A stretch of 64,000 nucleotides of DNA. Origin: Dimorphilus gyrociliatus. Lineage: Eukaryota > Animalia > Annelida. The translations under genes and the position numbers were made by a program. The DNA lies in NCBI GenBank assembly GCA_904063045.1, contig CAJFCJ010000017.1, positions 310,001 through 374,000 on the forward strand, read 5' to 3'. The notes under the pieces were generated by a model. It made no database searches. It was not told the DNA's origin and saw only the letters and a program-made list of their open reading frames with translations. This document shows positions 1,997 to 38,955 of this stretch, in pieces. Position 1 is the first letter of the stretch; each line of letters opens with the position of its first letter.

Positions 1997-4900
1997 TTAA
2001 CGAAATTTTACAATCAATATTGCGATTAGAATAATTGTTGTTATTATAAACACACCTAGTCCAGCTCCCAAACCAATTGCTATATACTTATATTTCTCGT
2101 AGTCCTCCTTATCTTCCTTTGTTGGTTTAGTTGACTTTCGTAATTCAACTGTTGTTGTTATCTTTGATGTTGTAATATTTTCATATTCAGAAGAATCTTT
2201 GTTGAATGTCACTTCTGTATACATCTGCGACGGTACGACTGTTATCTTCTCTGTTTTTGGTTCTCTTTTATTTGTTGTTATATCAATTTTCTTTGTTTCT
2301 AACACATCAGTTGTCACATCTTTAAAAGAGGTTGTTTCATATGGATTAAAAGTCGTCATAGGCATTTCTTTTGTCGATTCAAACTTTGATTTATCAACAT
2401 TCGAAGGTATTACTTGTACAGTAAAAGTCGATGTACTCGTACAAGGATTTAACGATTTATCAGATACTGTAACTATCGTTTCAAAAATGCCTACTGGAAG
2501 TGGAGATTCCAATGTATTTATTTCTCTTGTCTCTTCTTTCATATTTAGAAACGGCGAAACGTCATTACTTCTAACATTCACATTATAAATTAACTGAGAA
2601 TTTAGACCGAAATCCTTATCTGTTGCTTCAATGTTATAGATCGTAGAATTTGCAGATATACTAGAATTAACTGTGATTGTTATTCCATTCTTTGGTTTTT
2701 CTATTATCGCACAATCATTTATATCTAACACCGTTAGGTTGAACGATATTGTTTCCGAGTTCGAAGGAACTCCGTTGTCTGACGCCACAATATCAATTAA
2801 ATAGCTGCCGGGATTCAACTTTCCCGCAGTACGAATTACGCCCGTATGTACATCGATAGAAATAGCTACTGAGGTGGAGGATATCGAGTAGGATATAAGT
2901 CCTGATTCCCCGATGTCAGTGTCTTTCGCTTCAACTGTTAATATATACTCTCCGATGTCAGAACGCTCTCCAACTACGGCTGAATACGAATCCTTTACAA
3001 ATTTAGGAGTTGCCATGTTAGGTTTGACAGTCAACGAACAGTCGTCACCTTCGAATCCTTTCTCGCAAACACAAGTATTATTCGAAGCACAACGACCATT
3101 TTGGTTACAATCTGATACTTTATCACATAGTGGTACATCACACGACTCCCCGGACCACGATTCGTCGCAATTACATTTGTCAAACGATTCGCATCTGCCA
3201 TGTTTCGAACAGTACGACAACTCTTCGCATGAAAATTCTGTACAAACTTTACCAGAATATCCTTTCTTGCACTCACATTTGTTTGGGGAAGCACAATCAC
3301 CGTTAGATGAACATTGCGGATCACAGATTGGTAAGCCGCATGTCCTTCCAGCATATCCATCATCGCAAATACATTCTGTAGCATTTTTACATATTCCTCT
3401 TTCGTTACAATTGTCCATTAGAGGACATTCTTTTAAGATTCCACAATCATCTCCGCTATAGCCATCTTCGCATGTACAAACTCCAGGTTCGGTGCATTTA
3501 CCGTGACCACTGCAATCATTTTTACAGATTGGCTTAGAACAACTTAGACCAGTCCATTCTTTGAAACAAAGGCATTGATCGAAAGCAATACAAATTCCAT
3601 TTTGAGAACATTCGCCTCTTACCTCACAACTGAATGTGGCGCAATTTGTTCCATTGTAACCAATCTCACATTTACAAATGTCGTGGTCAATGCATATCCC
3701 ATGATCTGAACAACCTTCACTGCAAACAGCCTCTTCTGAGCAATTTTTTGATGTCCATCCTTCATCGCATTTACAAACATCTGATTTAACGCATTCTCCT
3801 TTTGATGAGCAATTGCCTTCGCAAATTGCCGCCATCTCACAAGTCGGTCCTTCGAAACCAGGAACACATTCGCAAAAGCCAGCCGAACAGTTTCCATTAA
3901 CACACTTTCCACATTCCCCAATTTCGCATGATTCCCCAGACCAGCTTTGTATACAAACACACTTTCCTCCAACACAGTTTCCTCTATTGGAACACTTCTC
4001 CGGACATTCATTGGCTTTCAGTACAGCTTGATTTCGTACCTTCGGATCATCGGTAATTACAACATCGTAGATACATTGATCAATCTCTTCCTTTGATAAT
4101 CGGTCAGATGTACAAACTTCTTTCGCAGTATTAATGTCGGATTGCGTAAATCCATTCAGTGAATAGAGAGGCTTATGCGTTGGATCAATATACGATTTAT
4201 CCATTGAGTCTTTCTCGTGAAAGTTTGATTCGGTATCAGACCAAGAATTAGGCAGTCCACCTCCATTTCTAATAGTCCGCTTCATTCTCCAAGATTCTAC
4301 AAATTGTACGGGATAAGTGTAATTTTTACCATCTGGACCCATAAGATCGTCCGAATCGTCATCGTTGAAATATCCACAAATGCCAGATGTCTTGTTGATC
4401 ATCTCATTTATTGGTGTTGTTATTAGAGTCAAGTATTGTCTCTTCATCTTAGAGCTGTATGATGCTACAATCGATAAACTAGCTCCATTTGAGAATTTTA
4501 AGGACACGAATAGAATGGTCGGATCATCTTCGGAGATTTCCTTCGCACGCAGGGAAATATCTAATCGAAGACTATCATTATGAAATTTGAATTTGTTCTC
4601 AGTGTTCAAATTGGACAATTCATTTCCATCAAGACGAAGAACAGGTAGATCTGTTAGTGTTGATGGAAATTTCGTGTTGATCGTTAAAACTGATGTATTG
4701 CCGAGTTTCAATGCAATCGCACCAATAAATGATGTTCTCTTAAAAGCAAAGAATCGAAACTGATAAGCTAAAAATGGTGATCGACAACCCCAGAATTGAC
4801 CGATTCCAAAGTAATCGAAAGATCTACCATCCAACGTTGCTAAATGAGGATCTCCCCAGTTCCTTCTAGGCAATCTTTGTTCGCAAGAACGGCCACCCCA

Positions 4901-7900
4901 TCCTCTATTACATGCGCATCTTGATCTGCAGTTCGCTGTTGCTACACAAAATCCGTTTCCACTGCAGCTAGAATCTGGTGGGCATGACGGTTGATCGCAA
5001 TTCGGTCCGGTTCTCTGTGACGTACACACACCATTAACACCACATTCATTTTCACAGGGACAAGTTCCATCAGGCTTTCTAACTACAATTCTGCCATCAG
5101 GACACGGTTCGCACGGTTCGCAGCGACATCCTTCTGGGCCGATTGTTGATTGAGTTCCATCTTCACATTCACAAGGGCATTCGAATTCTGGATCGTCGAG
5201 AGGTTTAGCTGTACCATCCGAACAGCAAGAACATTCACTATTCTTCAATTTCCAACTCATCATTTGCTTTTCGCCTGTACATTGACATCTACACATACAC
5301 TCTTTCTTTGTCGGATGAGGCATTCCGTAACCGATTTGTCCGTTATCTTCCTCACAGAGACAACATCTTTGCTCAACATCCCATGATTGTGGTAAAGCTA
5401 CACATGTACTTGTCAATTTTGATTCCCTTCTAGCTAAAGGAAATTGTAAAGATCCGCCAACGATGAAGGCGTGAAATTTTCCTCTCATAACTGTATTACC
5501 GAGATATAAACTAGCACTATTTGGCTTATCGACATTCGAACATGTTTCAGTATCACAGAATCCAGCTTTAAGTATAAATTCTTGACCCACATCAATAGAT
5601 GCTTCCGCCCGTAATTTAAATTTAAATTTTCCCTTGATCTCAACATCCTCCATCCAATCCTTGAATGATTTTATTATTCCTCTTCTATTACGTTTTTTCT
5701 TTATTTTATCATAAATTTTCTTTAGGACTTTTAGTTTGCCTAAAATACCAAGATCTGGCCACAATGCACGTATTCCGGCCCTTAAAGTTACAACTGTCTC
5801 AGCTGTAGCCGACCATTTTCCATTAATATTCCCAGGCCCAACGTTGATATCCGCTCCCTTTCCTAGTGATCTTAAACCGCCTCCCCTACTATAGCCTGCT
5901 CCTACATCGTAACTTGCACTTGCAGATCCACTGGCAGAAAGCGAAGCTTCAGCACCGACAGAAGCTTTTATAGGACCAACGCTAAACCTTCCAATGTTAA
6001 TCACACCGGGCACTGGCACGCCAAACACAGGAATTATAAATGGTCGCTTAGTAACAGATGGTAAAGGAATTTCAGGGAAGACTGTATATCTACTTGACTT
6101 TCCCGAATATCTGGCATTAATTGATGCATCATAACCTAATCGACCATTAGCTAAAAGACTAAAAGAATCAACGCTAAAGTCATGAGGTGATATTTTCACT
6201 TCCAGTGCTATTCCATTGGTAACTTTAATATTTCCACTAACACCGACAGATATTCCATTTTGCTAAAGAAAGTTTTGATTTAAACTATTGTCGATAAGAA
6301 ATGTTATTTAACTTACGCTCCATTGGCGATTAAATGGTTGGGATGCTGTAACCGTAACTTTTCCTCCAAACGAAGATCTTTTCTTTTTTGTTTTGGTTGA
6401 TATTTTGTCTATATTAAATTCTGTAGAATTCATTGTTTGCGAGACAGACGACATATCAATGACTTCAGCCGATATCCATCCCGATGATAGTAGCCTCTTG
6501 TTTAAAACAAATCCTAGAGCTGGTAAAGCAGTCCTACCCACTATCAATTCGTTTTCTCTAATAGATTTATCGTAATCTCGTCTATCCGTGTAAATAAGAC
6601 CACTAACGCTGTCGCCAGTCTTGCATTCAAGCTCAGAAGGTAGATTTTCAATGTTATCCAGATTATCACTTGGTTGTAAGCCCCTTGAACAATCCACCAA
6701 ATCAGATTCAATAAACACATCATTCTGACTTTTTCTAACTTTGGTAACTCTTTCCAAAAAGCCTTTAGGACTACTCGACAAAAGAACATCTCCTCTTTCG
6801 AAATTATTCACCTTTGTGTACACAAAATAAGACCATATTTTGTTATTTTCGTACGAATATTCCCTTCCTGAGCATTTATAAACTTCATCTCCAACATCAC
6901 TGTAGGTTTGATTAGAGTCAATAAAATTCTGCATTTGTTCGGGTGATGGAACTAAATCAACAGCTCGAGGATTTTCAATATCGTTGGAAGTACCTTCCAA
7001 TCTTACGTGAGCGTATTTTACAACTTCAAGTGGATCGGCTTGCTTTCCAACAGCTATTGTATATTTTGCTGGAGATCTTTTAAAGTCATAAATTTTATGC
7101 ATGATTCCATTCGCTTGGGGACTGAGTATGATATTTCCTTTTCTGAAGAATCTTTCAATTTCTGGAAATATCAAAATTTCAAAAAATCCTTCACTGTCTC
7201 CTTTCAAAGTTTGTCTAGCTGAACATTTGAAAATCCTTCTGCTTGGAGAAATTTTTATGACATTTTCATGAGTTTCCATATAATCTCTTCTGGATGGTTT
7301 TGTTAAATCTGGTCTAATCATGCCCAGTGGACATTTCGTTTCGTTCCAAGATATGCACTTATCATTCTGAGCAGTTGATGAATAGCAGGCTACCATATCT
7401 TTGCATTGCTCGCAAAAACCTTGTGATCCAGTTTGTGTAAAATTGCACAAATGCTCTTTGCATTCTATTTGTTGAATTTGTTTTGAACATGAAGAAGGAC
7501 TAATAGTAAGACAGTTCCTGTAAAAGTAGTTTTTACATTCCGATAACGGTTCCTTTGCTGTTCCTGGTATGCATTTTTCGGTGGAATCACACCATCCACA
7601 ACCTTCAGCTTTTGTACACTGTACGCAAGACGAATATCGAGGACATTTTGACGCACCACAGTTTGATCCGTACCATCCAGGTTGACATTTACAAATGTTG
7701 GGTCCTTTGCAACTTCCTCTACCTGAACAATCAGACACATCACGACAAGATATTTGGGAACAATCGTCTCCAGTCCAACCAGATTCACAAATACATTGCG
7801 TCCCAACACATGATCCTCTTCCATAACAGTTAGAAGGACAAAGTCCAGAACTCGATTTTCTACAAATCCATGGTTTCAAGATTGATAATTGAGAAGGGCT

Positions 7901-10900
7901 ATCTGTGAACCAAATATCGCTCACTTTAACCTTTCCATCAACATCTGTATATCTTAGTAAATCCGTCAGTCTATCGACACCTCGAAGAGCTGCTTCTGTT
8001 AGAAGAAAAGCCGAATTCTTCTTACACCATACATCAGCTTCCGCTTTTGAACCAGCTCCAACGTGAAAGTGATAACATGACCCTCGAATAAATTTCCAGC
8101 CAAGAACACAACTTCCAGACGTTGCTAAGCTGAGAGGTTCACTTTGCAATATTGGAACAAACTGAAGTATTGGAGATCCCTCAAGTGATTTACCATCTTT
8201 AATTCTCTTTCCAATTTTGTCGATATCCAAACTTCCCCACCAATTATATTGACAGTTACCACTTTGAAAGTCAGCATTTTGTAGACTGTAAGCCACCTCG
8301 TATGGTGTTTGAGGATTATTTAATATATTGTTATTGATGTACAAATTTCTGCTGACAGATGTAATCACAGCATCATTTCCTTCGTCTGGGTATTTTTTGT
8401 TAAAAATGAACGTATTCAACGATATATTAGTATTCAAATTGTTGGAATTGACGTATAGTAGGGTACCCTGGGCGGTATTATTATACAGAAGATTATTTGT
8501 GAAAGTGGTATCCGCATTTTCAATGTAGATTAAGTGATCACGTGATTTGGAATGTTGAATATTACATTTATCAAAGGTAACGGTAGCATTATTAATCCCG
8601 TAGTTGTTCATGCGAAGAAGGCTGCTTTCGTGTAAATTAGTAATAGAGTTTTGAGTAAACACCAAATTAGAGATTCTCGATTCAAAAGTTGAATTGAAAT
8701 AGACTCTAAGCACTTGTGAATTGCTTAATTTAGGAATATTCAAATTTCTGACGAGAACATAGGCACTATGAAGATCTATGTTTATCAAACTGGACGATTC
8801 GATGATGGGATGATTTTGATTAAATGTTAACCTTTCCAACCAAACGCTGTTGTGTATTTCGCTATTTCTATTATGAATATCTAGGCATCCTGTTTGGCAA
8901 TTTTCAAAACTTGTATCAGTAACTTTCAACTCAGTAGCTTCTCTCTCAAATGGACACGTTTCATAATCTGTTTGATCAATACCAATGAAAGATTGACAAT
9001 TACTGTGAATCGATCCGTAGAGAGCAATTCGAAATTTTTTTCCTTTCAATTTCTTCAAAGATATTCTAAAGTTTTTCCATTTCGTTTCCAAGTGTAACCT
9101 ATCTAAAAAGATTAGCCGATCTTCCAAGTCAGCGTAGACTGTTATTGTTTCACCTGGTATTGAATAGGCTGAGTTTTTGTATGCGCTTAATTTGAAAAAG
9201 CATAAATCATCTGTTGGATTGACGGTGGTGTCATAGATAAGAGCATTGGTTATCCCAGCATAGATAATTCCATATCTGCATTGAATATTTGAACTGTTAA
9301 AGAGGGCGAGATAATGGCCACTACTTGAGAGAGGAAAATCTTTGTCATGTCTAAGTCCGTAAGAAGCCGTTATATTATTAGCTGCAAGCCTTTGAAATGC
9401 TTTAAACGGACCGTTTCCTATTGAACGTCTATCGTTAACCCATTCACATGTATTCTCTTCAAAGTTGCAAGTATTTGCTGTAATTAATAAAAACGAAAAT
9501 ATGTTAAGCGTTATATGTTTGAATAAAATACTTACATTGTTGTTTAATTGCAGTGATTGTCAATTTCATATCATGACGGAAATTTACATTTAGCAAAAGT
9601 TGAACTCTGATCTTTCTTGTCGTTGATATAATGTTTATTTCCTTGATAGTTCTGGTTAACGAACTAATTAATGCATTACCTTCACCTTCATAAATCCTTA
9701 AGAAAATTTCTCCACTGATGTATCTTTTATAACGAGCTCTGACTTGTATTCTTTCGCCTTCTGGCGCTTCAAATATTACTGAACATCCTCTATGATGTGT
9801 AGATTTTAACCATGAGGCCTCAAACCAATAACCAAATTCTCCTGCTCTCACTGGAAATTTTGCTTCAGCAGAGCAGAAATAAAGTGGAGACCATTCTCCT
9901 CCAGTGATGGGTACAAAATCTAAGTTTTCCCTTGGCTTGAACTCCTTCCATAGAATAGCTCTTCCGACGTTACCAATTGTTGAATGAACTATTGATGCAC
10001 TATGATCATTATTTACCAGTTGAATAGCTGTGTCAGATATGTTATCAACCTTCAAGCCTTTAATTATCCAATTCTTTAAGTTATAACTGTTAATGACTGT
10101 CAAAGCTCCTGTTCCTTTTGAAAACGATACATTGTTTAATTTTGGTGCAGGACTCGAAAAAGATACAATTTCAATTCTATTCAATTCAACATTTGTAAAA
10201 AGACTCTGACGATTTCCTTTAAACAGGTATATTCTGTTTGATGTATATTCTTCTATGCAAGTTAATATCGGTACGTAGTTAGTCACTCTTGTAGGAACTT
10301 TTACGCAATTCATCAGGCTATTGGCATTTGTACAATCTAAACTCCAACTAGCCAAATATCGTGTAGAGATTGCTCTAAATTGTACACGGGCACCTGAAAA
10401 TGATCTTTTATTAAAATAATTTAAAAACTGGTTGAAAAAAACCTGACCTAATTTTCCTTTGAAACAAAATGAATTACAAATATCCTTTTGCTCTTTTAGA
10501 AAGTTTCCATCGTATTTAAAAGTAACGTAAAGCCACGCTCCATTCTCCAATACTTGAACATATTTGTTTTGTATCCTATATTTATCTGGGATAGGAGAAC
10601 CTGAAATTTGAATTGGATTGTTGTCTGTTCCTTTCACAGACATACTTCCCAATATCCATAAACTGGAACAAGATGCAAAATGCAATTTGGTATCTCTCCC
10701 ATCAATTTCAAGTTGTTTTTCAATGACAGTGTTTCCAGTGATATATACATTTCCAGATACTGACAACGAATTTGATATATAACCTTTAATGTCTTGAAAA
10801 TTCAGTTCAGGTTCTGGCAAGTCCATTGTTGAAGTCATTGACGAATCTCGATAAGATGGAGATAAATTTAATCTTGGAAGGAGTCCGTTAGTTCGTCCAT

Positions 10901-13900
10901 CAAAGATTCGTTGATAAGGATTATCCGAACTGAAGTAGTTTCGAGATACCTGGAAACGACATTGTTCATCTCGTCCTATTTGACATAAAAGATTTGTCCG
11001 AATTTCGTATTTATTCAATGGATTATTGAATTTGTTCTTGATAACCCTTTCAGGAAATGAATCCCCTTCGAGATTGATACAACTATCAGCACTATTATCA
11101 TTAAAGCTGTTATCTTCAACAACGACATTATGACCAATTTTTCCAGTTAATCTCAAATTGACCAAATCAGATGACGTATTACATTTGGTAAATGAATTGG
11201 ATTTCATTTCAAGACCTCCTTCACTAACATGAAAATTTATAATTTGTTGTTTTGAAGATGCATCATAGAGTTGATTTCCGGAGAAAACTACATTGTTTTC
11301 TATCGGTTTCTTGAAGAAATCTGTAGAAATAACGATGAACGATTCGGTTACATTACTTTTGAGAAATTTATTATCCATTATTTCAATTGGTCCTGATCTA
11401 TGATTAAGAAGGAAGATATTTTTAAAGTTTTTGACGTCTCTAAATATATTTTGTGAAATTTCCAATTTTCCATTAACTGGAAAATCAAAAAGGTTGATAT
11501 ACTGCGAACCCTGACCAGCTACATTAAATATCGTGTTATTTTTAATGATATATGACATATCAGCAGTCAATTCACTCCTAAACGATCCACGTATTATGCC
11601 ACTTAAATATTTTGTTGTATCAGTTGTAATCCAATTGCTTATCAGATTCAAATTAAACTTGACATATTTAGAATACATCAAATCATTCAATATTATTGGA
11701 GTATGACATTTAAAGATTGAATCTGTAACATTAACGGATAATGATTTTTGACGTCCAATTGGAACTTTTATAGCCTGTGATTGTCCTGTGAATTCACAGT
11801 TATATATTCTAACTGATCCCTCATCAACAAAATCTGTAGGTATGGAAACTGCAGCTGTTCCTTTCACGAATTTAGAATATTCAATATTGATATTAAAGTT
11901 TTCTTCAGTTGAAAAACTCAAGTGAAACTTAGGAGACTGGAAACTAGAGCTTTCAATTGAAAATGATGACGAAATATTTCGATTTTCCGCTATAATTCAA
12001 AGACAACGAATTAATTATATACTGTATAAACAGTGTTATATAACTTTGATTACTTACTTCCAACGTCAACACTATAAACAGCAATATAGTAGTATATCGT
12101 TATATAATAGCGCTTCTTTAAATACACTGTCCCCCTGTAATCTTGGATTGTCTGAATAGTCCACGGACCTTGTATAGGTTGATTGCCGTCAATACTTTGA
12201 ATATGACCAATCGGTGTATCGAAACTAGTTGTTCGGGGAAACAGGACAAACTTTAATGTCATATCCTTATCGGTTAAAAACCTTAAATAACAATTGACAT
12301 TCTTATTTCTTTCCAGATTGACCGATAAAGTTAAATAATCATGTTTCGGAATATAATATGAATTTGAACAATCATCGTTCGTTATTGTTTCAATATCTAG
12401 GTTATACTGGTCCAAGTTGTATCTGATTGAATGTGTATTAGTAATTGACACTTGTGAATCATGGAAAATTGAATCTTTTATCCTAAAAATTCTTCCGTTA
12501 ACTTTAAACTGTTGTTGATTATTCAGACTTGTAATATTCATATTTTCAAAAGTGATCTCCTCGTCCATAATTGTGTTGTGAGCCAGAACGTTAAAGTCAC
12601 TGTTTGTACTAATCCGCACATTCCTGACAGTATGTCTTAGAAATTCAAAATACAAATCTGAGCCAAGTAGTCCAGAGTTGAAAATAGATAATCCTTCAAT
12701 TAAACTCGGTCTAGAATTTGCTAAATAACTGACACCAATCCATCTTCTTTCGTTACATATTAATACTAAACCTCTCGAAAAAGTACACGGTCCCAAATGA
12801 GTTTTACAAGTACTATAATAACTTGTTGGACAATCTAATGTTATAGCCTCTCGTTTTCCAATATTCCAATAACTAGCTGAAGTATATCCCGCAAAACCCA
12901 TATTGTGACAAATTGCGTTGTAAGTGTCTTCTTTACCTTGCTCATAGCAAACAGGATATTCTTTTGAATTTATATTCATGAAAGTTCCTCTACTCAAAGA
13001 TGAGAAAACTGTCTCTACCTCAACATTTTTAATTTTGATGATAATATCGTCTGGTTGTTTTCCTCTAAATTCCAGTTTACCATAAACTTCAATTCCAGTA
13101 TATGGCCAAGCGTGTATCTCTACACCTTTCTCCACAATAACGTTGGCATTTCTTCGAATTCGAAGCGTTGCTTTAAGTTCATAAACTCCTTCAGTCAGTG
13201 TGACATTATTCTCAATATCACCACCTAAAACAAATTTCTTATAATCAAAGAGATAAGTTTGATTGACTTCGATGAAATTTTCCAAGTCGGAATATGTAGG
13301 ATTAATATCAACAAATAACGATTTGACAACCGCATGACGACCAATAACACGTTCCCAAGCATTGGAATCTCCCCAGAAGTTTCTTGTAGCGTTTACTCTT
13401 AAAGTAGATGTGGAAGAAGGTAGAAGTGATAATTCATACGGCATCTTTGGATTATTTAAGTTATTGAAATTGATATCAATTTCACTATTCGATTTAATCT
13501 TTATTGTAGAAGTTACGTAATTGGGGAAGTGTGTGATTATATCAGAACTTAAGTCTACAGGAATCGTATTATTTGTAATGTCATTATCTTCTATCTCAAT
13601 AGCACCTACATTCGAAGATGATGAGATATCAATAAAAGATTTTAGACTATAACAACTCTTTATTTTATTCCTCCTCACTACAGCACTAAACTGTCTTGTG
13701 TCAGAGGATATTGCTAAAAGAAATCCACCATAAGATCCAATCATTGAGTTATTATAAATATCAAAAACATATTTATGTAATTCAATTGCATAGTTCAGCT
13801 TACTCAATAACGAATGAAACGTGTTATTCGCTATTCTGATTTTATAATGTTGAGCATTATTCCTTTGACTATTTTCAAACATATGTTTCAAGTTATTTTC

Positions 13901-16103
13901 AAAATTATTAGATTCAACTGTAATTTTTGCTTGATTTTGTATATATAGTCCACTTCCATTCTTGTGATTTCTTATCATATTATCCACGAATGACAATACA
14001 ATTACATTTCCATTCAATAAAGTATTACCTTCTACATGTACACCATTTATAGCATTTTCTTCAATGTTACTTTCACTAATTGTTAAAGCTTGCCAAGAAC
14101 CATACATCATTAACCCGTAACGATTATGATTTATGACACACTTTCGTACATCGGTTAAATAGGAAGGATTATTTAAATTTATACCATAATTATCATTTTC
14201 CTCAAACCTGCTACCATTTATTATAATCGAATTTGTTGGTTTATCAGTTTTCAAGCCAATGCCATTTTGTGTAAATATCGAATTAGTAAGAATACTTAGA
14301 GTTGATTCTGAAATATCATTTATTAAATTCTTCAACTTGCCATTTAGAGTATGAATAATTGTATTGGTGTCACTAATTAGCGACTAATTTATACGTACTA
14401 GGCTCTACAGAATCAATTTCAATGTACAGTATTTTATTGGAGCTTACTCCTCTTAAATTTAAAATGATATATTCTTGACTAGATTCCAAATTAGCTGCTT
14501 CGAACGCTTCCCACGAATAACTTGCAGGACGATTCAAAAGGAATGGTGATGTTTCATCTTTACCATCTTTTATTGTTCCTTTAAACGAATAATCCCATTT
14601 AGAAAATTTCAATGAGAGAACTTGACCATCTTCCGCTTTGAATACCTTTAAATGATCAATTATCAATAAATGATTAACAATAAGAGATATTTTAAGTTAC
14701 AGTATTCTTTGGATATATACAATTGTTTCCAAGATAGTATAGTTTTGGATATGAAATATCTTCCGGTAAACATAAAGAGCATTTTATATCGCAAAGACTT
14801 GTCGGCGTTAAGTGTTCAGGAAGGACCCATTTTGCGGAAGATGTAATAGTAAGACCAGTCTCGTTATTTTCTACAAAAGTAAACAAGAAGAGCAGAGAAT
14901 AAACAATTATGCGTATAATTATTTCATTAAATACTTTCGGCAGTTATTTCATTCAAGCTGACTTTTTCATGTGAATCTATGATTAAACCATTCATTTCAT
15001 TGTTTCTAACTGATATTCTTTGTATGTTGAGTTCTTGTTCTGATTCCGTATTTCGTAAGTATAGAGCCGGATCGGAACTTTTCACATTCTCAGCCACGAT
15101 ATCCCTAAAAGCGATGTTGGGAATAAAACGAAATACATAAATAGGCCTATATTTTAAATATAAAATTGTCTATTTACTGATAGGAAAGAATAGTTGAATT
15201 TATAATGTGAACACCGACGCCGATGAGTTTGACATTATTAAAAGATGTTTGTTGAGAAGATCTGATAAGAATACCACTTTTTAGTCTAGGTCCATAACAT
15301 GTTAGTTTCATTGTTTGGTAATATCCACTTGCATCTAAATATAGATATTATTCATTACAAAGCTATTAAATGTGAATAACGAAGAAATGTTTTTTTGTAA
15401 AGAAATAGAGGGATAATAGGAATTTTCCTATATTTTCTTCTAACCTTCTAATTTACAATCCTTAATAGATTTAGCCGTTTGGTCACAAGTTACTTTGAAA
15501 CAGTTTTGTACTCTTTTACCTCTTGTAATAGCAGGTGCTATGTTCGTTTCGTAAAATCTTAGATATTTACAAGTTAACTAGAAAGAGAATGATATGCAAA
15601 TTGGTTCTTGTTTTTTTTTTTTAATATTAAACTTACACTTCTTAAATTTGAACTATCCTCTCTAGGTTCGAAACACACATCTTTGTATTGTCCATTTCTT
15701 GAGTCGAATATCATAGGCTCAAATGTACGACCTATATAAACATTATTTGTTTACCCTGCGACTTGGAAACTAGTTTGACTTTACCTTTTCCGCCTGCTTT
15801 TGAATTATTAAGAAATATAAAATCTTTATTTGAACTGAAATTGTCTTGACGAAAAATTATAGTCTGTTCCTTTACAGCTGAGATTAGCACAGGCTCCTCC
15901 TCTATTTCAATAAGACTGTCATCTTCTGCAAACGCAACATTAGCCCCAGAATTGACTATAATCCCTTTGGGTCTAACTGTTCCAGTAATTTTATGAGTAC
16001 CAGCTGATAATATCAGTGTCTTTCCATCGTAGCTTGAATCGATGTCCACAGTTTTCGCAACGAATATATTTATATATAGAATAAGTAGATAATGAAATAT
16101 CAT
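1997..16103 (-). CDS. Giant mosaic type-I membrane protein A (Bark/Anakonda-like beta-helix/SRCR/CUB units, MAM, C-type lectin, EGF, PSI, vWD, 10 EGF, 2 cadherin, TM); about 12 exons, est. ~4,400-4,500 aa
   Basis: ATG 16103 with signal peptide MIFHYLLILYINIFVAKT. Track ORFs 15732-16103, 14692-14886, 14373-14666, 12050-14335, 9504-11921, 6308-9127 and 1997-6199 join via GT-AG introns (phase-checked e.g. at 15732-15784, 9482-9537, 6263-6316). Motifs: MAM CNFEENTCEW; CLECT-like CVLGWKFIRGSCY...KPWIC; PSI CVQCTKAEGCGWC; vWD WGDPHLATLDG...SGICGYFNDD; cadherin AKDTD/SDNG/LDINDC; TM IAIGLGAGLGVFIITTIILIAILIV, then KFR-stop. Confidence 0.85.
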
Positions 16104-16871: not shown

Positions 16872-17250
16872 TTTTTGGTGATATTTCTCACGTTAATACT
16901 CTTCTACGATTTTCAATTTCACCATTATCTACTTCCGTTGGAACACATTCACAAGACAACTCTACAGTTTCCTCTTCCAAATCCTTAAAGATGTCTTCTG
17001 TTGTATTTCTAATTTGTCTATACGACAACAATTCCCTCACCGATCTGGGATTTTTGATTCTATCGTTTGTTTCCATGACATTTAACAAAGTACTCTTTCC
17101 ACTTATAACTACTTTAGTTATACTATTAACAATACATTTTTTTCCATTTCACTCCTTCTTTAAGAAATCAAAAGCTGATTCATTACATTTCGACAATTTC
17201 TAAAAACTTTATCGAAGATATTTTGTTGGACTGCAAATAAAATATTTTTA
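16872..17250 (-). pseudogene. Internally deleted relic of the neighbouring atlastin/GBP-like GTPase
   Basis: 16872-17075 matches ~290-488 and 17081-17250 matches ~1537-1710. An in-frame TGA precedes a degenerate P-loop (KKE*NGKKCIVNSITKVVISGKSTLL). Confidence 0.85.
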
Positions 17251-17479
17251 AATTGCAACTTTCACATGACAATCAATGTATTTGAAAACATTATATTTCG
17301 TAATTGTTTAAACCATATATCTCTTGAAACGTAGGATTATTATTGAGTATACGACAGCATTAGAACTATAACAACAGAGCTATCGACCAAAAATATAATT
17401 TTATAATTATTAATTTTATTCATAAATCCTTGTAATATTTATCATTAATAACACAAAATAACGCATCTGGTCTTTAATA

Positions 17480-17648
17480 ACACTGATAATAAATTTAACG
17501 AAACTTTACAACTAATATTATGATTATAATGATTATTTATTACTACAAAAACAACTTATTAAACATTAAAATCATTTCCTATATACTCTTATGTCTCGAA
17601 ATCATCTTCATTTACTATCTTTGATATTGTAATATTTCGATATTCAGC
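17480..17648 (-). pseudogene. Degenerate copy of the stalk/TM/stop end of gene A
   Basis: aataataaatttaacgaaactttacaact matches 1987-2015, and ctatatactcttatgtctcg...tatctttgatattgtaatattt matches ~2080-2180 with an internal gap. Confidence 0.65.
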
Positions 17649-18335
17649 AATTTTACAATGAATATTGCGATTAGAATGATTGTTATTATTATAAACACAC
17701 CTAATCCAACTCCCAAACCTATTGTTGTATACCTATATTTATTAGAGTCCTCGCTATCTTCCTTTGTTGATTTAGTTGACTTTCGTAATTCAACCGTTGT
17801 TATTATCTTTGATGTTGTAATATTTTCATATTCAGAAGAAGAATCTTTGTTGAATGTCACTTCTGTATACATCTGCGACCGTGCGACTGTTATCTTCTCT
17901 GTCTCTGGTTCTCTTTTATTTGTTGTTATATCAATTTTCTTTGTTTCTAACACATCAGTTGTCACATCTTTTAAAGAGGTTGTTTCATATAGGTTAAAAC
18001 TTCTTCTTTACACTTCATAATAGATTCAGTCGTTTGGCCTCCAGGCACTTGGAAACAGTTTAGTACGCTATTGCCTCTTGTAATAGTAGGTCGTAGGCTC
18101 ATTTCGTGTAATCCTAGATCAGTTTCTTGAATTATAATGATACTTTCGATGTTCGAAACACATATCTTTGTATTGTCCATTTCTTGAGTCGAATATCAGA
18201 GGCTCAATACGTTATATATTATTATTTGCTATTTAGAAGCTGGCTTGACTTTACACATTCCGTCTTGTCGATTAACTTTTTTTTTTGATAATTGTAATAC
18301 TATTTATAGTTGTTTCGCAGACGGCGTTTCTTCCT
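17649..18335 (-). pseudogene. Collapsed copy of gene A: upstream motif and exons 2-3 fused directly to the stalk/TM exon
   Basis: 17649-17995 matches ~2004-2350 (TTDVLETKK...TM). 18000-18120 matches exon 3 (~15440-15570). 18150-18255 matches exon 2/intron 1 (~15665-15790). gcagacggcg at ~18317 matches ~16202. The fusion is out of frame. Confidence 0.8.
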
Positions 18336-18587
18336 CTTAATTTCGTCCTCTTTTTCATTGTTTTAACAATTGATTATTTAGAAAATGATTCCTATAAAAA
18401 TACATTTCAAATTCGGTAATTGAACAAACTTCAAATATTTTGTTATTGTTGAAAAAAGGAAAGAAATCTCCCATTGATGGCGTTTTAACCGAGATGAGTT
18501 TTTAAAGTCTATTTTCTATACAAAAATCCTTCAGGTATTTAATTTATTAATCATTCAAAAAAACATTTCTTTTTCTTTATGACAAAC

Positions 18588-20880
18588 TTAATGAATCCAA
18601 CGACCTCTCATTATTGCAACAAGAACTATAGAAATTGTTATTATTTCGAAACACAACGACCATTTCGGTAACAATCTGATACTTTATCGCAAAGAGGTAC
18701 ATCACATGACTCTCCAGACCAGAACTCGTCGCAAATACATTTATTAAACGATTCGCATCTGCCATGTTTCGAACAGTACGACAACTCTTCGCATGAAAAT
18801 TCTGTACAAACTTTCCCAGAATATCCTTTCTTGCACTCACATTTGTTTGGAAAAGCACATTCGCCGTTAGATGAACATTGCGGATCACAGATCGGTATAG
18901 CGCATGTCCTACCAGCATTTCCATCATCGCAGATACATTCTGTTGCATTTTTACATACATTACATTCCTCTCCCGTTACAATTATCCATTAGAGGACATT
19001 CTTTTAAGATTCCACAATCATCTCCGCTATAGCCATCTTCGCATGTACAAACTCCAGGTTCGGTGCATTTACCGTGACCACTGCAATCATTTTTACAGAT
19101 AGGCTTAGAACAACTTAGACCAGTCCATTCTTTGAAACAAAGGCATTGATCGAAAGCAATACAAATTCCATGTTGAGAACATTCGCCTCTTACCTCACAA
19201 CTGAATGTGGCGCAATTTGTTCCATTGTAACCAATCTCACATTTACAAATGTCGTGGTCAATGCATATCCCATGATCTGAACAACCTTCACTGCAAACAG
19301 CCTCTTCTGAGCAATTTTTTGATGTCCATCCTTCATCGCATTTACAAACATCTGATTTAACGCATTCTCCTTTTGATGAGCAATTGCCTTCGCATATGGC
19401 TGCTGTTTCACAAGTCGGTCCTTGGAAGCCAGGAACACATTCGCAAAAGCCAGCCGAACAGTTTCCATTAACACACTTTCCACATTCGCCAATTTCACAT
19501 GATTCCCCAGACCAGCTTTGTATACAAACACACTTTCCTCCAACACAGTTTCCTCTATTGGAACACTTCTCCGGACATTCATTGGCTTTCAGTACAGCTT
19601 GATTTCGTACGTTTGGATCATTCGTAGTCACAACATCGTAGATACATTGATCAATCTCCTCCTTTGATAATCGGTCAGATGTACACACTTCTTTCGCAGT
19701 ATTAATGTCGGATTGCGTAAATCCATTCAGTGAATAAAGAGGCTTGTGCGTTGGATCAATATACGATTTATCCATTGAGTTTTTCTCGTGAAAGTTCGAT
19801 TCAGGATCAGACCAAGAATTAGGCAGTCCACCTCCATTTCTAATAGTCCGCTTCATTTTCCAAGATTCTACAAATTGTACGGGATAAGTGTAATTTTTAC
19901 CATCTGGACCCATAAGATCGTCCGAATCGCCATCGTTGAAATATCCACAAATGCCAGATGTCTTATTGATCATCTCATTTATTGGCGTTGTAATTAGAGT
20001 CAAGTATTGTCTTTTCATCTTGGAGCTGTATAATGCTACAATCGATAAACTAGCTCCATTTGAGAATTTTAAGGACACGAATAGAATGGTCGGATCATCT
20101 TCGGAGATTTCCTTCGCACGCAGGGAAATATCTAATCGAAGACTATCATTATGAAATTTGAATTTGTTCTCAGTGTTCAAATTGGACAATTCATTTCCAT
20201 TAAGACGAAGAACAGGTAGATCTGTTAGTGTTGATGGAAATTTCGTGTTGATCGTTAAAACTGATGTATTGCCGAGTTTCAATGCAATCGCACCAATAAA
20301 TGATGTTCTCTTAAAAGCAAAGAATCGAAACTGATAAGCTAAAAATGGTGATCGACAACACCAGAATTGTCCGATTCCGAAGAAATCGAAAGATCTACCA
20401 TCCAACATTGCTAAATGAGGATCTCCCCAGTTCCTTCTAGGCAATCTTTTTCGCAAGAACGGCCATCCCATTCTCTATTACATTCGCATCTTGATCTACA
20501 GTCGACTGCTGCTACACAAAATCCGTTTCGACTGCAACGAGAATCTGGTGGGCATGCCGGTTGATCGCAATTCGATCCGGTTCTCTGTGACGTACAAACG
20601 CCATTAACACCACATTCATTTTCACAGGGACAAGTTCCATCAGGCTTTCTAACTACAATTCTGCCATCAACACACGGTTCGCACGGTTCGCAGCGTCATC
20701 CTTCTGGGCCGATTATCGATTGCGTTCCATCCGGAAGATAGTAGCCTCTTGTTTGAAACAAATCCCAGAGCTGGTAAAGCAGTCCTACCCACTACATCGT
20801 TTTCTCTAAGAGATTTATCGTTAGTCTCGCCTATCCAAATAAATAAGACTGCAAACGCTATCCGCACTCTTACATTCAAG
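18588..20880 (-). pseudogene. Copy B of the giant receptor: vWD-EGF fragment with two large deletions and frameshifts
   Basis: High nucleotide identity to ~3076-5161 and ~6475-6630. 1-bp deletion at ~20446-20450 (ttttt vs tttgtt at 4876-4881). 7-bp insertion (acattac) at ~18957. EGF region joined directly to a TM end reading ...RGRWIH*. Confidence 0.85.
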
Positions 20881-21330
20881 ATTATCAGTTTAGATTTAAC
20901 AGAGGTAATTTCATATGTAATATAATCTTGATAAAGGTTATATTATTTTTTTGAATACATGTTTTTTCATTTTGTGAAAAAATCCAAAATAGTTGAAAAA
21001 TATTTTTCAGCCATTTTGAATAATTGTTATTATACCTTTCCAATACTATTCTTCTTTTAGAGATATGTTTCATAATATTATATTTTATTTACTTATTAAT
21101 TATTGTTAATATTTGCAGTATAGTATAAAGAATCATTGATAAAACATGTGCAGTTAAATGTAAGAATTGCAAGCTATTTTTAGCACAATCACATTCTAAG
21201 GTGTCAGTTTGTCTGGATTGGGAAAAAAGAATCTTCTTTTTTTTTTTTCTTTTCCTTATGTGTTAATCTTTTATCATTTTCTTAGTATTATATATACTTT
21301 ACTTTAGTATTAATAAAAAAAAGTCTAGAA

Positions 21331-21428
21331 TTTCATGGGTTCGGTTTCACCAAAAAGGGGTACGATTTCACACAGATACGGTTTCATCTGGGTACGGTGT
21401 CACCGGTATGGTTACGTTTTCACCCCTA
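21331..21428 (-). mobile_element. Solo terminus of an Ac/hAT-like DNA transposon (TIR plus subterminal repeats)
   Basis: Minus strand begins TAGGGGTGAAA (21428-21418), 10/11 identical to the maize Ac TIR TAGGGATGAAA. Five degenerate copies of TGAAACCGTACCC follow. I found no partner TIR or TSD nearby. Confidence 0.6.
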
Positions 21429-22882
21429 TTCAGTTCAGAACTAGACTTTCCACATATCCATGGTTTCAAGATTGATAATTGAGAAGGGCTATTTGTGAAC
21501 CAAATATCGCTCACTTTTGTATTTCCGTCAACATCTGTATATCTTAGTAAATCCGTCAGTCTATCGACAGCTCGAAGAGCTTCTTCTGTTAGAAGAAAAG
21601 CCGAATTCTTCTTACACCATATTTCAGCTTCCGCTTTTGAACCAGCTCCAACGTGAAAGTGATAACAGGATCCTCGAATAAATTTCCAACCAAGAACACA
21701 ACTTCCAGATGTTGCTAAGCTGAGAGGTTCACTTTGCAGAATTGGTACAAACTGAAGTATTGGAGATCCCTCAAGTGATTTACCATCTTTAATTCTCTTT
21801 CCAAGTTTGTCAATATCCAAACTTCCCCACCAATTATATTGACAGTTACCACTTTGAAAGTCAGCATTTTGTAGACTGTAAGCCACCTCGTATGGTGTTT
21901 GAGGATTATTTAATATATTGTTATTGATGTACAAATTTCTGCTGACAGATGTAATCACAGCATCATTTCCTTCGTCTGGATCTTTTTTGTTAAAAATGAA
22001 CGTATTCAGCGATATATTAGTATTCGAACTGTTGGAATTGACGTATAGTAGGTTACCCTGGGCGGTATTATTATACAGAAGATTATTTGTGAAACTGATA
22101 TCAGCATTTTCAATGTAGATCAAGTAATCACGTGATTTGGAATGTTGAATATTACATTTATCAAAGGTAACGGTAGCATTATTAATTCCATAGTTGTTCA
22201 TTCGAAGAAGACTGCTTTCGTATAAATTAGTAATAGAGTTTTGAGTAAACACCAAATTGGAGATTCTCGATTCAAAAGTTGAATTGAAATGAACTTGAAT
22301 TACATGTGAATTGTTCAAGTTAGGAATATTCAAATTTCTGACGAGAACATAGGCACTATGAAGATCTATGTTTATCAAACTGGACGATTCGATGATGGGA
22401 TGATTTTGATTAAATGTTAACCTTTCCAACCAAACGCTGTTGTGTATTTCGCTATTTCTATTATGAATATCTAGGCATCCTGTTTGGCAATTTTCAAAAC
22501 TTGTATCAGTAACTTTCAACTCAGTAGCTTCTCTCTCAAATGGACATGTTTCATAATCCGTATGGTCAATACCAATGTAAGATTGACAATTATCCTGAAT
22601 CGATCCGTAGAGAGCAATTCGAAATTTCTTTCCTTTTAATTTCTTCAAAGATATTCTAAAATCCTTCCAGTCTTTTTCTAAATTTAGCCTGTCTAAAAAG
22701 ATTAATCGATCGTCCAAGTCAGCATAGACTCTTATAGTTTCATCTTGTGAGAAATACTTTGAATTTTTGTATGCCGCTATCTTGAAAAAGCATAAATTAT
22801 CTGTTGGCTTGACAGTTGCACCAAAGGCATTATTGATTATTATTAATTGATTATTCAAAATATGATTCCTATAATAATACAT
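21368..22882 (-). pseudogene. Copy C: truncated but uninterrupted 504-codon paralog fragment (MAM C-part, beta-helix, C-type lectin-like)
   Basis: 21437-22830 aligns to ~7847-9240 of gene A with no stop or frameshift. The N-terminus (MYYYRNHILNNQ) comes from non-homologous flank and the C-terminus (LNRGENVTIPVTPYPDETVSV*) from the hAT-like end. Functional status unknown. Confidence 0.65.
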
Positions 22883-23008
22883 TTCAAATTTCGAAATTGA
22901 ACAAACTTTAACAGTTCTGTTTTTGTTGAAAAAACCCTTTACATTATCTTGCGGTATATTTCAGTTGTAAGAAAGATATCTCCCATTGATTGCTTTTTAA
23001 CCAAGATG

Positions 23009-23462
23009 GGGGACTTATCTTCACGCAGACAGGAGAAGAAGCTGTATAGTTCTGTTTATTTTTTTGGTCTAAGAGTACAAAGGAACTTATACTTAAAAAC
23101 ATACTTTAGAAAAGCTCATAATCTTTAGCCAAGTTCTATTCATTTAACTTTTTTGAAAACAAGACATTTGAATACTAGACTTTGTGACATCCTGCTACTA
23201 TAGACAACAGACAATTCTCCATCTATTGATTGATAATTAGATGTTAAATCATCATTGCAGAATTGATGAAAGAAGCAAACTTAATTATCGCTTATAAGAA
23301 ACTATTAAGTCAAAGAAAGATATGTAGACAACAAAGGGAGACCAATCAGAACATTCTGAGTCAGATTTCTGTGGGAGATGTTGTGAACAGTTTCGCCTCA
23401 GCTGTGGGCGTTTTTTCCTGAACTCTTACCGGATAATTCTAACAATTGTCAAACAGATTTGC
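23009..23462. other. ~450-bp insertion of unknown origin within a duplicated 3' flank
   Basis: Flank 22845-23008 plus 23463-23620 aligns to 18365-18650, where this segment is absent. Confidence 0.6.
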
Positions 23463-23553
23463 GTTTTTAAAGTTCATTTTTTATAAAAAAATCCTTCAAA
23501 TATTTAATTCATTAATCATTCAAAAAAAACATTTCTCTTTCTTTATGGCAAAC

Positions 23554-23900
23554 TTAATGAATCCAACGACCTCTCATTATTGCAACAAGAACTATAGAAA
23601 TTGTTATTATTACAAGAAGACCCAATCCAACTCCCAAGCCTATTGTTGTATACATATATTTCTCAGAGTCCTCGCTATCTTCCTTTGTACGTTCACTTGA
23701 CTTTTGCAACTCAACTGTTGTTGTAATCTTTGATGTTGTAATATTTTCATATTCAGAAGATGGATATTTCCTGAATAAGTAGAAAATGAAATACCATTAT
23801 TAGATAAAATGATATTTGTCCTTGTTTTGTTGTTGTTCCCCAATTAAATCGCAATATCGCTACAACTAGCTTCACTAAACGAAAGTAGAGTAGTCTGCCG
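23554..23900 (-). pseudogene. Extreme collapsed copy: promoter and start codon fused to the stalk/TM/stop end
   Basis: ATG at 23797 reads MVFHFLLIQEISIF* (gene A: MIFHYLLILYINIF). It is joined out of frame to SSEYENITTSKITTTVELQ...IGLGVGLGLLVIITISIVLVAIMRGRWIH*. tcgctacaacta at ~23856 matches gene A upstream ~16384. Confidence 0.8.
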
Positions 23901-36800: not shown

Positions 36801-38955
36801 TTTTGAAATAGTTAACACATAATTCCCAGCTTCATTCGGTATAAATTGATTTTTTAGAATATAGACTTTAGCTGTTAAGTGAGCGACGTTACCGTCAAAA
36901 TTTAAAACACCTGGGACGTTTCTGAAAACGTTTCTTTCAATTCTTAAATCTATTTCTTTCAAAGTTTTTATCGTCTGTTTTGTAATTTGATTTTCAAACG
37001 TATTATCATAGAAGAATGTCTGAATGATTCCCTTATCGTCGCTAGATCTTGAAAAATGAACGAATGCCGATTCTTCTTCATTAGAAATGAATTTTGAATG
37101 TTCAATAATAAATTGTGAACAGCATCCAAATACTTCTAGACCATTTCTATTATTATTAACTTCGACGTCGCGTAAGTTTGTCAAACCATAAGTATATTTT
37201 AAATTTATACCATTTTCTCTATTGTTCATGCATTTAACATCTTTCATGATAATAGGAAGTTTGAAAAAATCTATATTCAATCCGTGTCTGTTACCGTTGA
37301 ACCTTGAATTTTGTATAAAACTAAAATTTGTTGAGCCTTTAAACGATTCAAGATAGATGAAAAATTCTTGATTCTCTTGAATATCTTTAACGTTTATGTT
37401 AATAAATTCTCCTTTAGTTTGATAATAATCATCGATATCTTTAGAATATTTATTTTCTACGATAGATGGAGAACTATCGTGTTTTCCGTCTCTAATACTA
37501 TAATTAACTTCATTGGAACCAAATACTTTAATTGTAAATAAATGCCCTTGTTCCGCTTTAAATACCTATAAAATAAATTATCAAAGAACATTCTCATTTC
37601 ATATGTAAACTCTTTAAAAAACCTTTCTTTGTGTACCCGAACATTTGGAATCAATAAAAAGAAGAGTTGGATATTTAATAGTAGTTGAAGTACAAATGGA
37701 ACATGACAATTGACAGTAATTTGTCTGAGAAACCGTTGGTCTATCAATGTATGGTGATCTTATAAAGATTCCATCTTTTTCGTTATCTATATAAATGGAA
37801 TTTCTATTATATCAGCTAGTCTATCACTAATAATAGTCTACCTATAGCTTCAATGTTATTTAATTGAAACTTTGTGTCAAAATTAACGAATAGACCAGAA
37901 CCAGAGCCTCTTTTAACCGTTACTGAGTTTAAATTGACCTCTTTCCTCCCTTTATTCTTTGTATCAATAAGAATAGATGGATTTGCATTGATATTACTGG
38001 CTTGAACATACCTATATTGAATAAGGAATATATCAAAACACTATATTACTTATAGAATACAAACTCAAATTTGTTCACATAGGATGCTGTTAGATGTATT
38101 CCAACATTGGTTATAACGTTTGAAATGGAAACGTCACTTATAGTCTCACCAATGATACCTTGGTATAGAGACCATCTGTAGCAGGTTATCTTTAATCTTC
38201 TCGATTCAAACTTTAGTCTTGCTAATAAGGTGATACATTATGATTTATACTGACTCCTTATTATTTCATTTATAATTAAATCTTACTGGAAAATTGACAT
38301 TGATTTGTAGTTTTAGCGTAAGATGAACAAGTAACTGAATAACAACCAGAGTAGAACGATAAACGTGTATAAGTATAGAATTGTTTGTCATAGAACCCCA
38401 AGTCTTGGCAATGAAGCTAAATAAAAAAGAGATAAGATAATGTTTATACTTCAATTAAGTAGTGTTTTTGTTTTGATTAAAACCTTGGCAAATGTTGCAG
38501 GATTACCCGAATACCCACAAATGTTGTAGGTGGCATTATTCTTTGATAGATATTTTGGATAATATTCATATCCTTTTGAACGTTTAATTATTAATTAATA
38601 GTCAAAATTAAACGTCTTTTAAAAGCTTACTTTGAGAATCCTGATAATCTATTGTCCATATATAGTTTTTACTTACAAATGGTGGTTTTTTGTGTTTCGT
38701 TAATATATGTATAGGCTTATCAACATCTCCAGCCAATTTTATTGACCCATATTTGACAAATAGTTTACTGGTATCACTGTTAAAAGTAATATTCGACCCT
38801 GCCTTTACAGTCAGAGATGAAACTGTCTTACTTCCGCTTATCACATAATTTCCTTCATTTATCACTAAATCTTGAAAGGTATAAGCATTTCTAATTATGC
38901 TACTTTCTAATAGAACAAAAATTATCCATTTTAGTAACTTAATAAATGAAATCAT
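24869..38955 (-). CDS. Giant mosaic type-I membrane protein D, full-length divergent paralog of gene A; est. ~4,400-4,500 aa
   Basis: ATG 38955 with hydrophobic leader MISFIKLLKWIIFVLLESS. Track ORFs 38608-38955, 34941-37280, 33400-34944, 29222-33355, 28624-29268 and 24869-28159 plus small exons join in phase. Same domain order as A (MAM CTFEKSSCGW, vWD WGDPHLETLDG, 10 EGF, cadherin-like, TM VTFVLIGLGCSLVIICMIIGIVYFI). Confidence 0.85.

What the first reader, a model, noticed from the sequence alone, without database searches (positions are those of the whole stretch)
9130..16103. Giant receptor with an Anakonda/Bark-like tripartite head on a vWD-EGF-cadherin stalk
Seen: the N-terminal ~2,300 aa of A (and D) repeat one unit three times. 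Each unit has a beta-helix cap (e.g. GGDIENNVTLTEGVYELKATLRIRRNANVIVEKGVEIHAWPYTGIEVYGKL), a reduced SRCR-like Cys pattern, beta-helix turns and a CUB-like module. Beta-helix blocks close with NP..YE...N(F/Y/W)(W/F)(G/S)...RI.D, and a C-type lectin-like domain follows. Established: Drosophila Bark beetle/Anakonda, a tricellular junction protein, has a tripartite SRCR/CUB/beta-helix ectodomain with a C-type lectin domain. Inference: here that head is combined with a MAM insert, an attractin-like EGF-EGF-PSI block, vWD, 10 EGF and 2 cadherins, with only a 3-10 aa cytoplasmic tail. I do not recognise this architecture as a named family. It could be a lineage-expanded adhesion, cuticle/mucus or pattern-recognition system.
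Basis: partly seen in the sequence, partly recalled or inferred. Interest (0 to 1): 0.8.

Follow-up and report, generated by a model that had tools for sequence, protein, structure and literature searches.

The report
Ancient long-stalk Anakonda-like surface protein
A tiny marine worm has an expressed gene for a 4,455-residue cell-surface protein that carries the triple-repeat head of the fly junction protein Anakonda on a long, probably self-cutting, mucin-4-like stalk; the same unstudied design occurs from sponges to lancelets, and the worm also has an ordinary Anakonda gene.

Summary
Real gene. Gene A (minus strand, 16,103 to 1,997; 12 exons; 4,455 aa) of Dimorphilus gyrociliatus is one spliced type I membrane protein; four introns, including the head-to-stalk joint, are seen in transcript contigs. 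The head is homologous to Bark/Anakonda: three helix closures in register, SRCR-type modules with 6, 6 and 5 cysteines, CUB-like modules and a trimmed C-type lectin fold. It is not Bark: the genome has a separate true Bark gene, a tree separates the two, and A lacks Bark's long PDZ-type tail. It is also not lineage-specific. The whole head-plus-stalk design occurs in a sponge, a nemertean, a brittle star and lancelets, with partial matches in an acorn worm, a tubeworm and Lingula, all unnamed. At least 11 copies exist in the worm. Most likely a cleaved, MUC4-like tethered surface coat or adhesion protein without signalling (about 50%). The scan found this family before on other contigs (s1-080710). 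No paper describing it was found.

The parts
1997..16103 (-). Gene A, 12 exons, 4,455 aa, type I membrane protein. Exons: 16103-15785, 15731-15637, 15577-15445, 15334-15178, 15104-14935, 14870-14701, 14645-14399, 14307-12058, 11989-10448, 10393-9536, 9477-6317, 6262-1997
   Evidence: last four introns seen in spliced contigs
16047..16103 (-). Signal-peptide-like N-terminus (aa 1-19)
   Evidence: sequence; inference, no predictor run
13229..16046 (-). Head unit 1 (aa 20-790): helix cap, 6-Cys SRCR-type module (15,788-15,288), beta-helix, CUB-like module (14,802-14,400), beta-helix closing at 13,381
10788..13228 (-). Head unit 2 (aa 791-1,581): cap, 6-Cys SRCR-type module (13,027-12,740), beta-helix, CUB-like module (12,376-12,059), beta-helix closing at 10,940
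8123..10787 (-). Head unit 3 (aa 1,582-2,432): cap, 5-Cys SRCR-type module, CUB-like module (9,884-9,537), MAM insert, beta-helix closing at 8,245
8954..9475 (-). MAM insert after CUB3; absent from Bark and the sponge gene, present in Tubulanus and amphioxus P0110
7859..8119 (-). C-type-lectin-like domain with the long loop region deleted
7514..7840 (-). EGF-EGF-PSI block
6395..7513 (-). Family-diagnostic module: Cys-rich helical part plus small beta-barrels; no Pfam or PDB family
6374..6394 (-). Furin-type basic site (KKKR); a basic site lies at this position in 24 of 42 relatives that cover it
5285..6376 (-). Long-stranded beta-sheet module with a second basic site at about 5,698; shape resembles bacterial DUF8402/8403 and fungal DUF7029/7223 proteins
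   Evidence: model made from paralogue F
4865..5281 (-). Cys-rich linker ending in an EGF-like repeat
4007..4858 (-). VWD domain starting with GDPH (aa 3,504), followed by a C8-like region
3029..4006 (-). Ten teneurin-type EGF repeats
2375..3007 (-). Two cadherin repeats
1997..2377 (-). Ser/Thr-rich spacer, TM helix (2,086-2,009), 3-residue tail and stop
16872..23800 (-). B: broken, deleted copy of A (MAM-CTL 93% DNA identity, VWD-EGF 95%, two TM copies, SRCR1 exons) plus a piece of the neighbouring GTPase gene
24869..38955 (-). Gene D (DgyrCDS10784), intact paralogue, 13 exons, about 4,460 aa, 33% identical to A and colinear end to end

Best explanation
Gene A is a fast-evolving worm member of an ancient, unnamed animal family that is paralogous to Bark/Anakonda. 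It most likely works like a tethered mucin (MUC4 type) with an Anakonda head. The protein is made as one chain and cut in the secretory path, by a furin-type protease after the barrel module and by itself at GDPH. This gives a large outer part (triple-repeat head) held on a membrane anchor (VWD, C8-like, 10 EGF, 2 cadherins, Ser/Thr spacer, TM). The stalk lifts the head well off the membrane, where it binds like heads or matrix and glycans, as an adhesive or coat element of epithelial surfaces, and can be shed. With a 3-residue tail it does not signal by itself. Shown: gene, splicing, homology, distribution, conserved sites. Inferred: cleavage, location, ligand and role.
For: One spliced gene. 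Head homology to Bark with blank controls and SRCR register above all 50 shuffles in each unit. Same architecture in Oscarella, Tubulanus, Amphiura and Branchiostoma. GDPH in 14 of 17 members with the VWD start, sponge included; GDPH is an autocatalytic Asp-Pro site (PMC10880436) and is thought to split MUC4 into an outer subunit and a VWD-EGF-TM anchor (PMC8660890). Basic site in 24 of 42 relatives. Aka adheres homophilically through its ectodomain (PMC11698045). A separate Bark gene exists, and grouping the worm's family with it is rejected. Variants in a second population are 25 silent to 14 replacement codons.
Against: No localisation, binding or cleavage data exist for any member. Paralogues D, E and G lack the basic site, and E lacks GDPH and a TM helix in its public model, so cleavage is not universal. 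In FCGBP, GDPH cleavage stabilises the domain and does not release it (PMC10880436). Expansion and fast change also fit an immune role. NPxY tails in amphioxus members point to endocytosis there.
Confidence: 0.5

Rival explanations
1. Pattern-recognition or scavenging receptor: the SRCR, beta-helix and lectin-like head binds microbes or food particles at gut, gill or skin surfaces, and the family expands under microbial pressure.
For: At least 11 copies in a genome with few expansions, most of them immune (PMC7854359). Several copies in amphioxus, some with NPxY tails. Paralogues only about 30% identical. Neighbouring GBP-like GTPase gene was duplicated along with A.
Against: The lectin domain lacks its long loop. 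The worm's copies have no endocytic or signalling tail. D has a syntenic counterpart in a related genome. The worm's SRCRs have drifted below Pfam detection.
Confidence: 0.25
2. Junction protein working like Anakonda: the three repeats contact three membranes at cell vertices or in a wider intercellular gap, as a second or tissue-specific tricellular component.
For: The head is the part of Aka needed for vertex accumulation, and the cytoplasmic domain is not (PMC11698045). All three units are kept from sponge to worm.
Against: A true Bark gene is present. About 2,000 extra residues of stalk seem too long for a septate gap (own knowledge and inference). No PDZ-binding end. Many divergent copies are hard to fit to a homophilic vertex seal.
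Confidence: 0.17
3. The membrane form is only a precursor; the working product is a released extracellular matrix, glue or cocoon protein.
For: Two basic sites and a GDPH site lie between head and membrane; no cysteine directly before GDPH in A; paralogue E has no TM helix in its public model.
Against: A 900-residue EGF-cadherin anchor is conserved from sponge to amphioxus, which is more than a disposable tether needs.
Confidence: 0.08

Closest known systems
Bark beetle / Anakonda (Drosophila; orthologue on contig C15 of this genome)
   Same: [quoted passage not shown]
   Different: Bark goes from the lectin domain straight to the TM helix and a long tail with a PDZ-type end. A inserts a MAM and about 1,900 residues of stalk and has a 3-residue tail. 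They are separate branches in the tree.
Unnamed long-stalk proteins of Oscarella pearsei, Tubulanus polymorphus (XP_074657284), Amphiura filiformis (XP_072043066), Branchiostoma (XP_019641180, XP_035694471 and others), Saccoglossus (XP_006826010)
   Same: Whole domain order from head to cadherins, GDPH, often the basic site. These are A's true family.
   Different: Labelled uncharacterised or bark beetle-like and unstudied. Their SRCRs are canonical, tails are longer, cadherin number varies (six in the sponge), and the MAM is present only in some.
MUC4, SUSD2, FCGBP (GDPH-type VWD proteins)
   Same: VWD starting with GDPH; in MUC4 followed by EGF repeats and a TM helix. A's VWD matches FCGBP and VWF in the PDB.
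   Different: No NIDO or AMOP detected and no large mucin repeat; ten EGFs and two cadherins; Anakonda-type head.
Attractin / MEGF8 and teneurins
   Same: EGF-EGF-PSI block; teneurin-type EGF run.
   Different: Shared modules only; no kelch, laminin-EGF, NHL or YD repeats.
Bacterial DUF8402/DUF8403 and fungal DUF7029/DUF7223 proteins
   Same: Predicted shape of the barrel-plus-sheet module: TM 0.52-0.63 by the match for bacterial rows, about 0.37 for the fungal row.
   Different: Model against model only; no significant sequence match (best DUF7223 E 0.008 in 1 of 44 rows); functions unknown.

Membership tests
Bark/Anakonda | Tripartite ectodomain | tested here: met
   Three closures in register in A, D, F, sponge, amphioxus and Mya Bark
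Bark/Anakonda | One SRCR domain per repeat | tested here: met
   6, 6 and 5 Cys in register; 19.0, 13.6 and 9.7 bits against a profile built without the worm's copies, above all 50 shuffles each. Weak: below Pfam cut-off and no PDB hit
Bark/Anakonda | CUB domains | tested here: inconclusive
   Modules align with Bark's; the unit-3 profile's top three PDB hits are CUB proteins but only at E 0.013-0.3; not folded
Bark/Anakonda | Right-handed beta-helix blocks | tested here: met
   PF13229 E 3.5e-11; Bark profile hits at the closures
Bark/Anakonda | C-type-lectin-like domain followed directly by the TM helix | tested here: not met
   Lectin-like domain present but followed by about 1,900 aa of stalk
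Bark/Anakonda | Long cytoplasmic tail with C-terminal PDZ-binding motif (PMC5509417) | tested here: not met
   Tail is 3 residues; the C15 Bark gene has a tail of over 200 aa ending in a PDZ-type motif
Bark/Anakonda | Orthology | tested here: not met
   Separate Bark gene; Bark is one side of a 100% branch; AU test rejects the worm's family plus worm Bark; long branches limit the detail
Bark/Anakonda | Localisation at tricellular junctions and homophilic adhesion | not testable with these tools
   Needs antibody staining and aggregation assays
GDPH-cleaved membrane mucins (MUC4 type) | VWD with GDPH, then EGFs and TM | tested here: met
GDPH-cleaved membrane mucins (MUC4 type) | Large mucin tandem repeat, NIDO and AMOP domains | tested here: not met
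   No such Pfam hit in A or relatives; only about 90 aa of Ser/Thr-rich spacer
GDPH-cleaved membrane mucins (MUC4 type) | Actual Asp-Pro cleavage | not testable with these tools
   Needs protein work
Calcium-dependent C-type lectins | Long loop with sugar- and calcium-binding motifs | tested here: not met
   Region is deleted in A and its paralogues relative to Bark; judged by alignment
Unnamed long-stalk Anakonda-like family | Head, lectin-like, EGF-EGF-PSI, barrel module, sheet module, VWD, EGF run, cadherins in this order | tested here: met
   A profile built only from distant members scores A at 1,721 bits; its matched stretches span aa 48-4,385, but the unit-1 and unit-2 stretches hit overlapping profile positions

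The most novel reading that the evidence does not exclude
This long-stalk protein is the ancestral form, already present in sponges, and the tricellular-junction protein Anakonda/Bark arose from it by loss of everything between the lectin domain and the membrane. The triple-repeat head would then predate tricellular septate junctions, and the stalk would carry an undescribed barrel-plus-sheet module shared with bacterial and fungal surface proteins.
Probability: 0.4. Interest if true: 0.75.

Novelty: new variant of a known kind. Interest (0 to 1): 0.58.

Why it matters
Anakonda's triple-repeat ectodomain is described as unique, and the idea that it reads the geometry of three-cell vertices is still a model (PMC5509417). 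A second, older family with the same head on a long cleavable stalk gives a natural comparison: what the head binds, whether three repeats imply three membranes, and where the invertebrate tricellular seal came from. The family is unannotated in lancelet, brittle star, acorn worm and sponge, all workable animals. It is also a rare expansion in a genome known for compaction. The limit is that no function has been shown for any member.

Tried and rejected
Several separate genes: rejected by spliced contigs and by phase-matched introns in D. A as the worm's Bark orthologue, or a recent offshoot of it: rejected. Lineage-specific invention: rejected. My first model with a 420-nt first intron was wrong; it hid two SRCR exons. 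Word searches were nearly blind here: one returned only its query and a profile search only its first row, so their blanks mean nothing. First fold of the barrel module with 5 sequences was unusable (pLDDT 43). Fold searches of the good model found no PDB match (Foldseek none at E 0.001; best Z 7.8, small barrels only); at 746 residues this does not prove a new fold. Atlas feature searches scored under 0.9. A fragment alignment (A1) misaligned and was dropped. The worm-only SRCR profile found nothing in the PDB. Paper searches found no description of the family; the two original Anakonda papers were not read. Further paralogue loci could not be fetched, so their full architecture rests on the co-location of three probes.
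Full report
Source and gene. The window comes from a 77.9-Mb animal genome in 349 contigs; paralogues carry Dimorphilus gyrociliatus gene names. The finding's coordinates cover the 5' part of gene A on the minus strand. I built a 12-exon model from 16,103 to 1,997 giving 4,455 aa. Laying run X2 on 6,200-12,199 showed spliced contigs with GT-AG introns at 6,263-6,316, 9,478-9,535 and 11,990-12,057, and an in-frame 54-nt intron near 10,394-10,447. One contig runs from the head across the intron into the MAM exon; a second overlaps it by 30 nt inside that same open exon and runs to the last exon. X2 may be data used for the public annotation, so it is not independent of it. They have the same phases as in gene D, and the contig extends 3,548 nt beyond 12,199 against 3,399 nt of model. 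By its length the 3' contig ends near 2,036, so the stop codon itself is not covered. Method note: database searches were made exon by exon by reference, or with public protein ids. The joined model was used only inside local scripts and was sent to no search tool.

The head. Pfam sees only beta-helix in A's head. A Bark profile built from ten orthologues scores A at E 1e-24, with hits at the helix closures and the lectin-like domain; reversed and shuffled heads give nothing. The closure motif occurs three times, at aa 740, 1,531 and 2,392, as in Mya Bark at 875, 1,691 and 2,460. Each unit has an SRCR-type module aligned with Bark's, with 6, 6 and 5 cysteines. All three score above 50 shuffles against a profile made without the worm's copies. 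The CUB-like modules align with Bark's, and a unit-3 profile returns CUB proteins as its top three PDB hits, weakly. The lectin-like domain lacks its long loop.

It is not Bark. A search of the genome found a separate gene on contig C15 with canonical SRCRs, a lectin domain, a TM helix straight after it and a long tail. Its best relative is Mya protein bark beetle-like at 35% over 99% of the query. In a quick tree of 23 heads, Bark is one side of a fully supported branch and A groups with its own paralogues. Forcing the worm's family together with the worm's Bark is rejected. The tree is unrooted, used a simple model and has long branches, so only this split should be trusted.

It is not a local invention. 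Because word searches left the protein open, I ran the large profile search with the module after the PSI domain. It gave 89 hits. Named long hits are from Oscarella pearsei, Tubulanus, Amphiura, Branchiostoma and Saccoglossus; Ridgeia and Lingula have matches to the module. Segment profiles show the full order in the sponge, nemertean, brittle star and several amphioxus proteins: Bark-like head, lectin-like, EGF-EGF-PSI, barrel module, Cys-rich, VWD, EGF run, cadherins. The Saccoglossus models are partial. Amphioxus P0110 has three Pfam SRCRs and a MAM at the same place as A. A profile built only from these distant members scores A at 1,721 bits. No arthropod, nematode, mollusc, cnidarian or vertebrate was among the roughly 30 hits I could name; the rest are unnamed, so absence is not shown. 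In the worm, three probes co-locate in order at 11 loci, with further broken or partial ones. D has a counterpart next to the same kinase gene in another sequencing run. B, between A and D, is a broken copy of A.

The stalk. The VWD begins with GDPH in A and in 14 of 17 members examined, the sponge included. GDPH is an autocatalytic Asp-Pro site (PMC10880436) and is thought to split MUC4 into an outer subunit and a VWD-EGF-TM anchor (PMC8660890). A basic furin-type site follows the barrel module in 24 of 42 relatives; A and F have a second one inside the sheet module. A model of these 746 residues of paralogue F reached pLDDT 82: a Cys-rich helical part, small beta-barrels, then long beta-strands. 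It has no PDB match. Its nearest predicted shapes are bacterial hypothetical, DUF8402/8403 and fungal DUF7029/7223 proteins, which is a lead only. The worm's TM-bearing copies end 3 to about 11 residues after the helix; distant members have longer tails, and some amphioxus ones contain NPxY. Contigs from a coral metatranscriptome differ from A at 25 silent and 14 replacement codons, consistent with purifying selection, though some may come from B.

Mechanism. Shown: one expressed gene, an Anakonda-type head, a conserved stalk with cleavage motifs, no signalling tail. Established elsewhere: Aka adheres homophilically through its ectodomain and does not need its tail to gather at vertices (PMC11698045). 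Inferred: the chain is cut, the anchor holds the head far from the membrane, and the head binds like heads, matrix or glycans at an epithelial surface, as an adhesive or sheddable coat (0.5). Rivals are pattern recognition (0.25; the genome paper notes only nine expanded families, mostly immune, PMC7854359), an Aka-like junction role (0.17) and a released matrix or glue protein (0.08).

Verdict. A real, ancient, unnamed paralogous family of Bark/Anakonda: it works with the same head but fails the membership tests for Bark (stalk, tail, orthology). I found no paper on it. The scan noted the same family on other contigs (s1-080710); I reached this reading before looking, and that note is not independent evidence. 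New variant of a known kind; interest 0.58. If Bark proves to be a truncation of this family, interest would be about 0.75.

Noticed in passing
window 1-1,694 (-): GBP/atlastin-like GTPase gene directly downstream of A; pieces of it were duplicated with A into region B (16,872-17,075, 94% identical).
   Followed up: partly
window 16,872-23,800 (-): Broken copy B; one X2 contig resembles a diverged copy of the MAM region and may be a B transcript. Its VWD-EGF block differs from A at 24 silent and 18 replacement codons.
   Followed up: partly
window 39,438-40,628 (-) and L025:98-517: PKA-type kinase gene upstream of D; the same neighbour sits upstream of the D-like gene in run SRR23372228 (98% aa identity), so synteny is kept.
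   Followed up: yes
window 42,091-63,100: Ordinary neighbours by Pfam: RRM/xRRM protein (LARP7-like), MYST acetyltransferase with C2HC finger, single-exon PDZ-arfaptin protein (PICK1-like, 48,542-49,813), tectonin-propeller protein (TECPR1-like), PEPCK, LUC7, C2H2 zinc finger.
   Followed up: no
P0001 (DgyrCDS11743; L014-L016): Paralogue E has a 3,898-codon open exon, has lost GDPH, and in its public model ends in thrombospondin-like repeats with no TM helix.
   Followed up: partly
P0049, P0088, P0115: Amphioxus members end with an NPxY motif, absent in the worm's copies.
   Followed up: no
P0109: An amphioxus member appears to have four head units through an internal duplication; the Amphiura member lacks SRCR1 and the sponge member lacks SRCR2 and SRCR3 in the alignment.
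   Followed up: no
P0019: A Sinanodonta (mussel) protein combines Bark-like beta-helix units with F5/8, TIG and EGF domains: another mosaic using the same helix unit.
   Followed up: no
run X1 on window 6,508-12,199: A coral metatranscriptome holds seven short contigs 90-99% identical to A, so a Dimorphilus-like worm is probably in that sample.
   Followed up: partly
L020:3040-7564 (-): Next to the Bark gene on C15 lies a gene with PAN, C-type lectin and thrombospondin-like modules and a TM helix.
   Followed up: no
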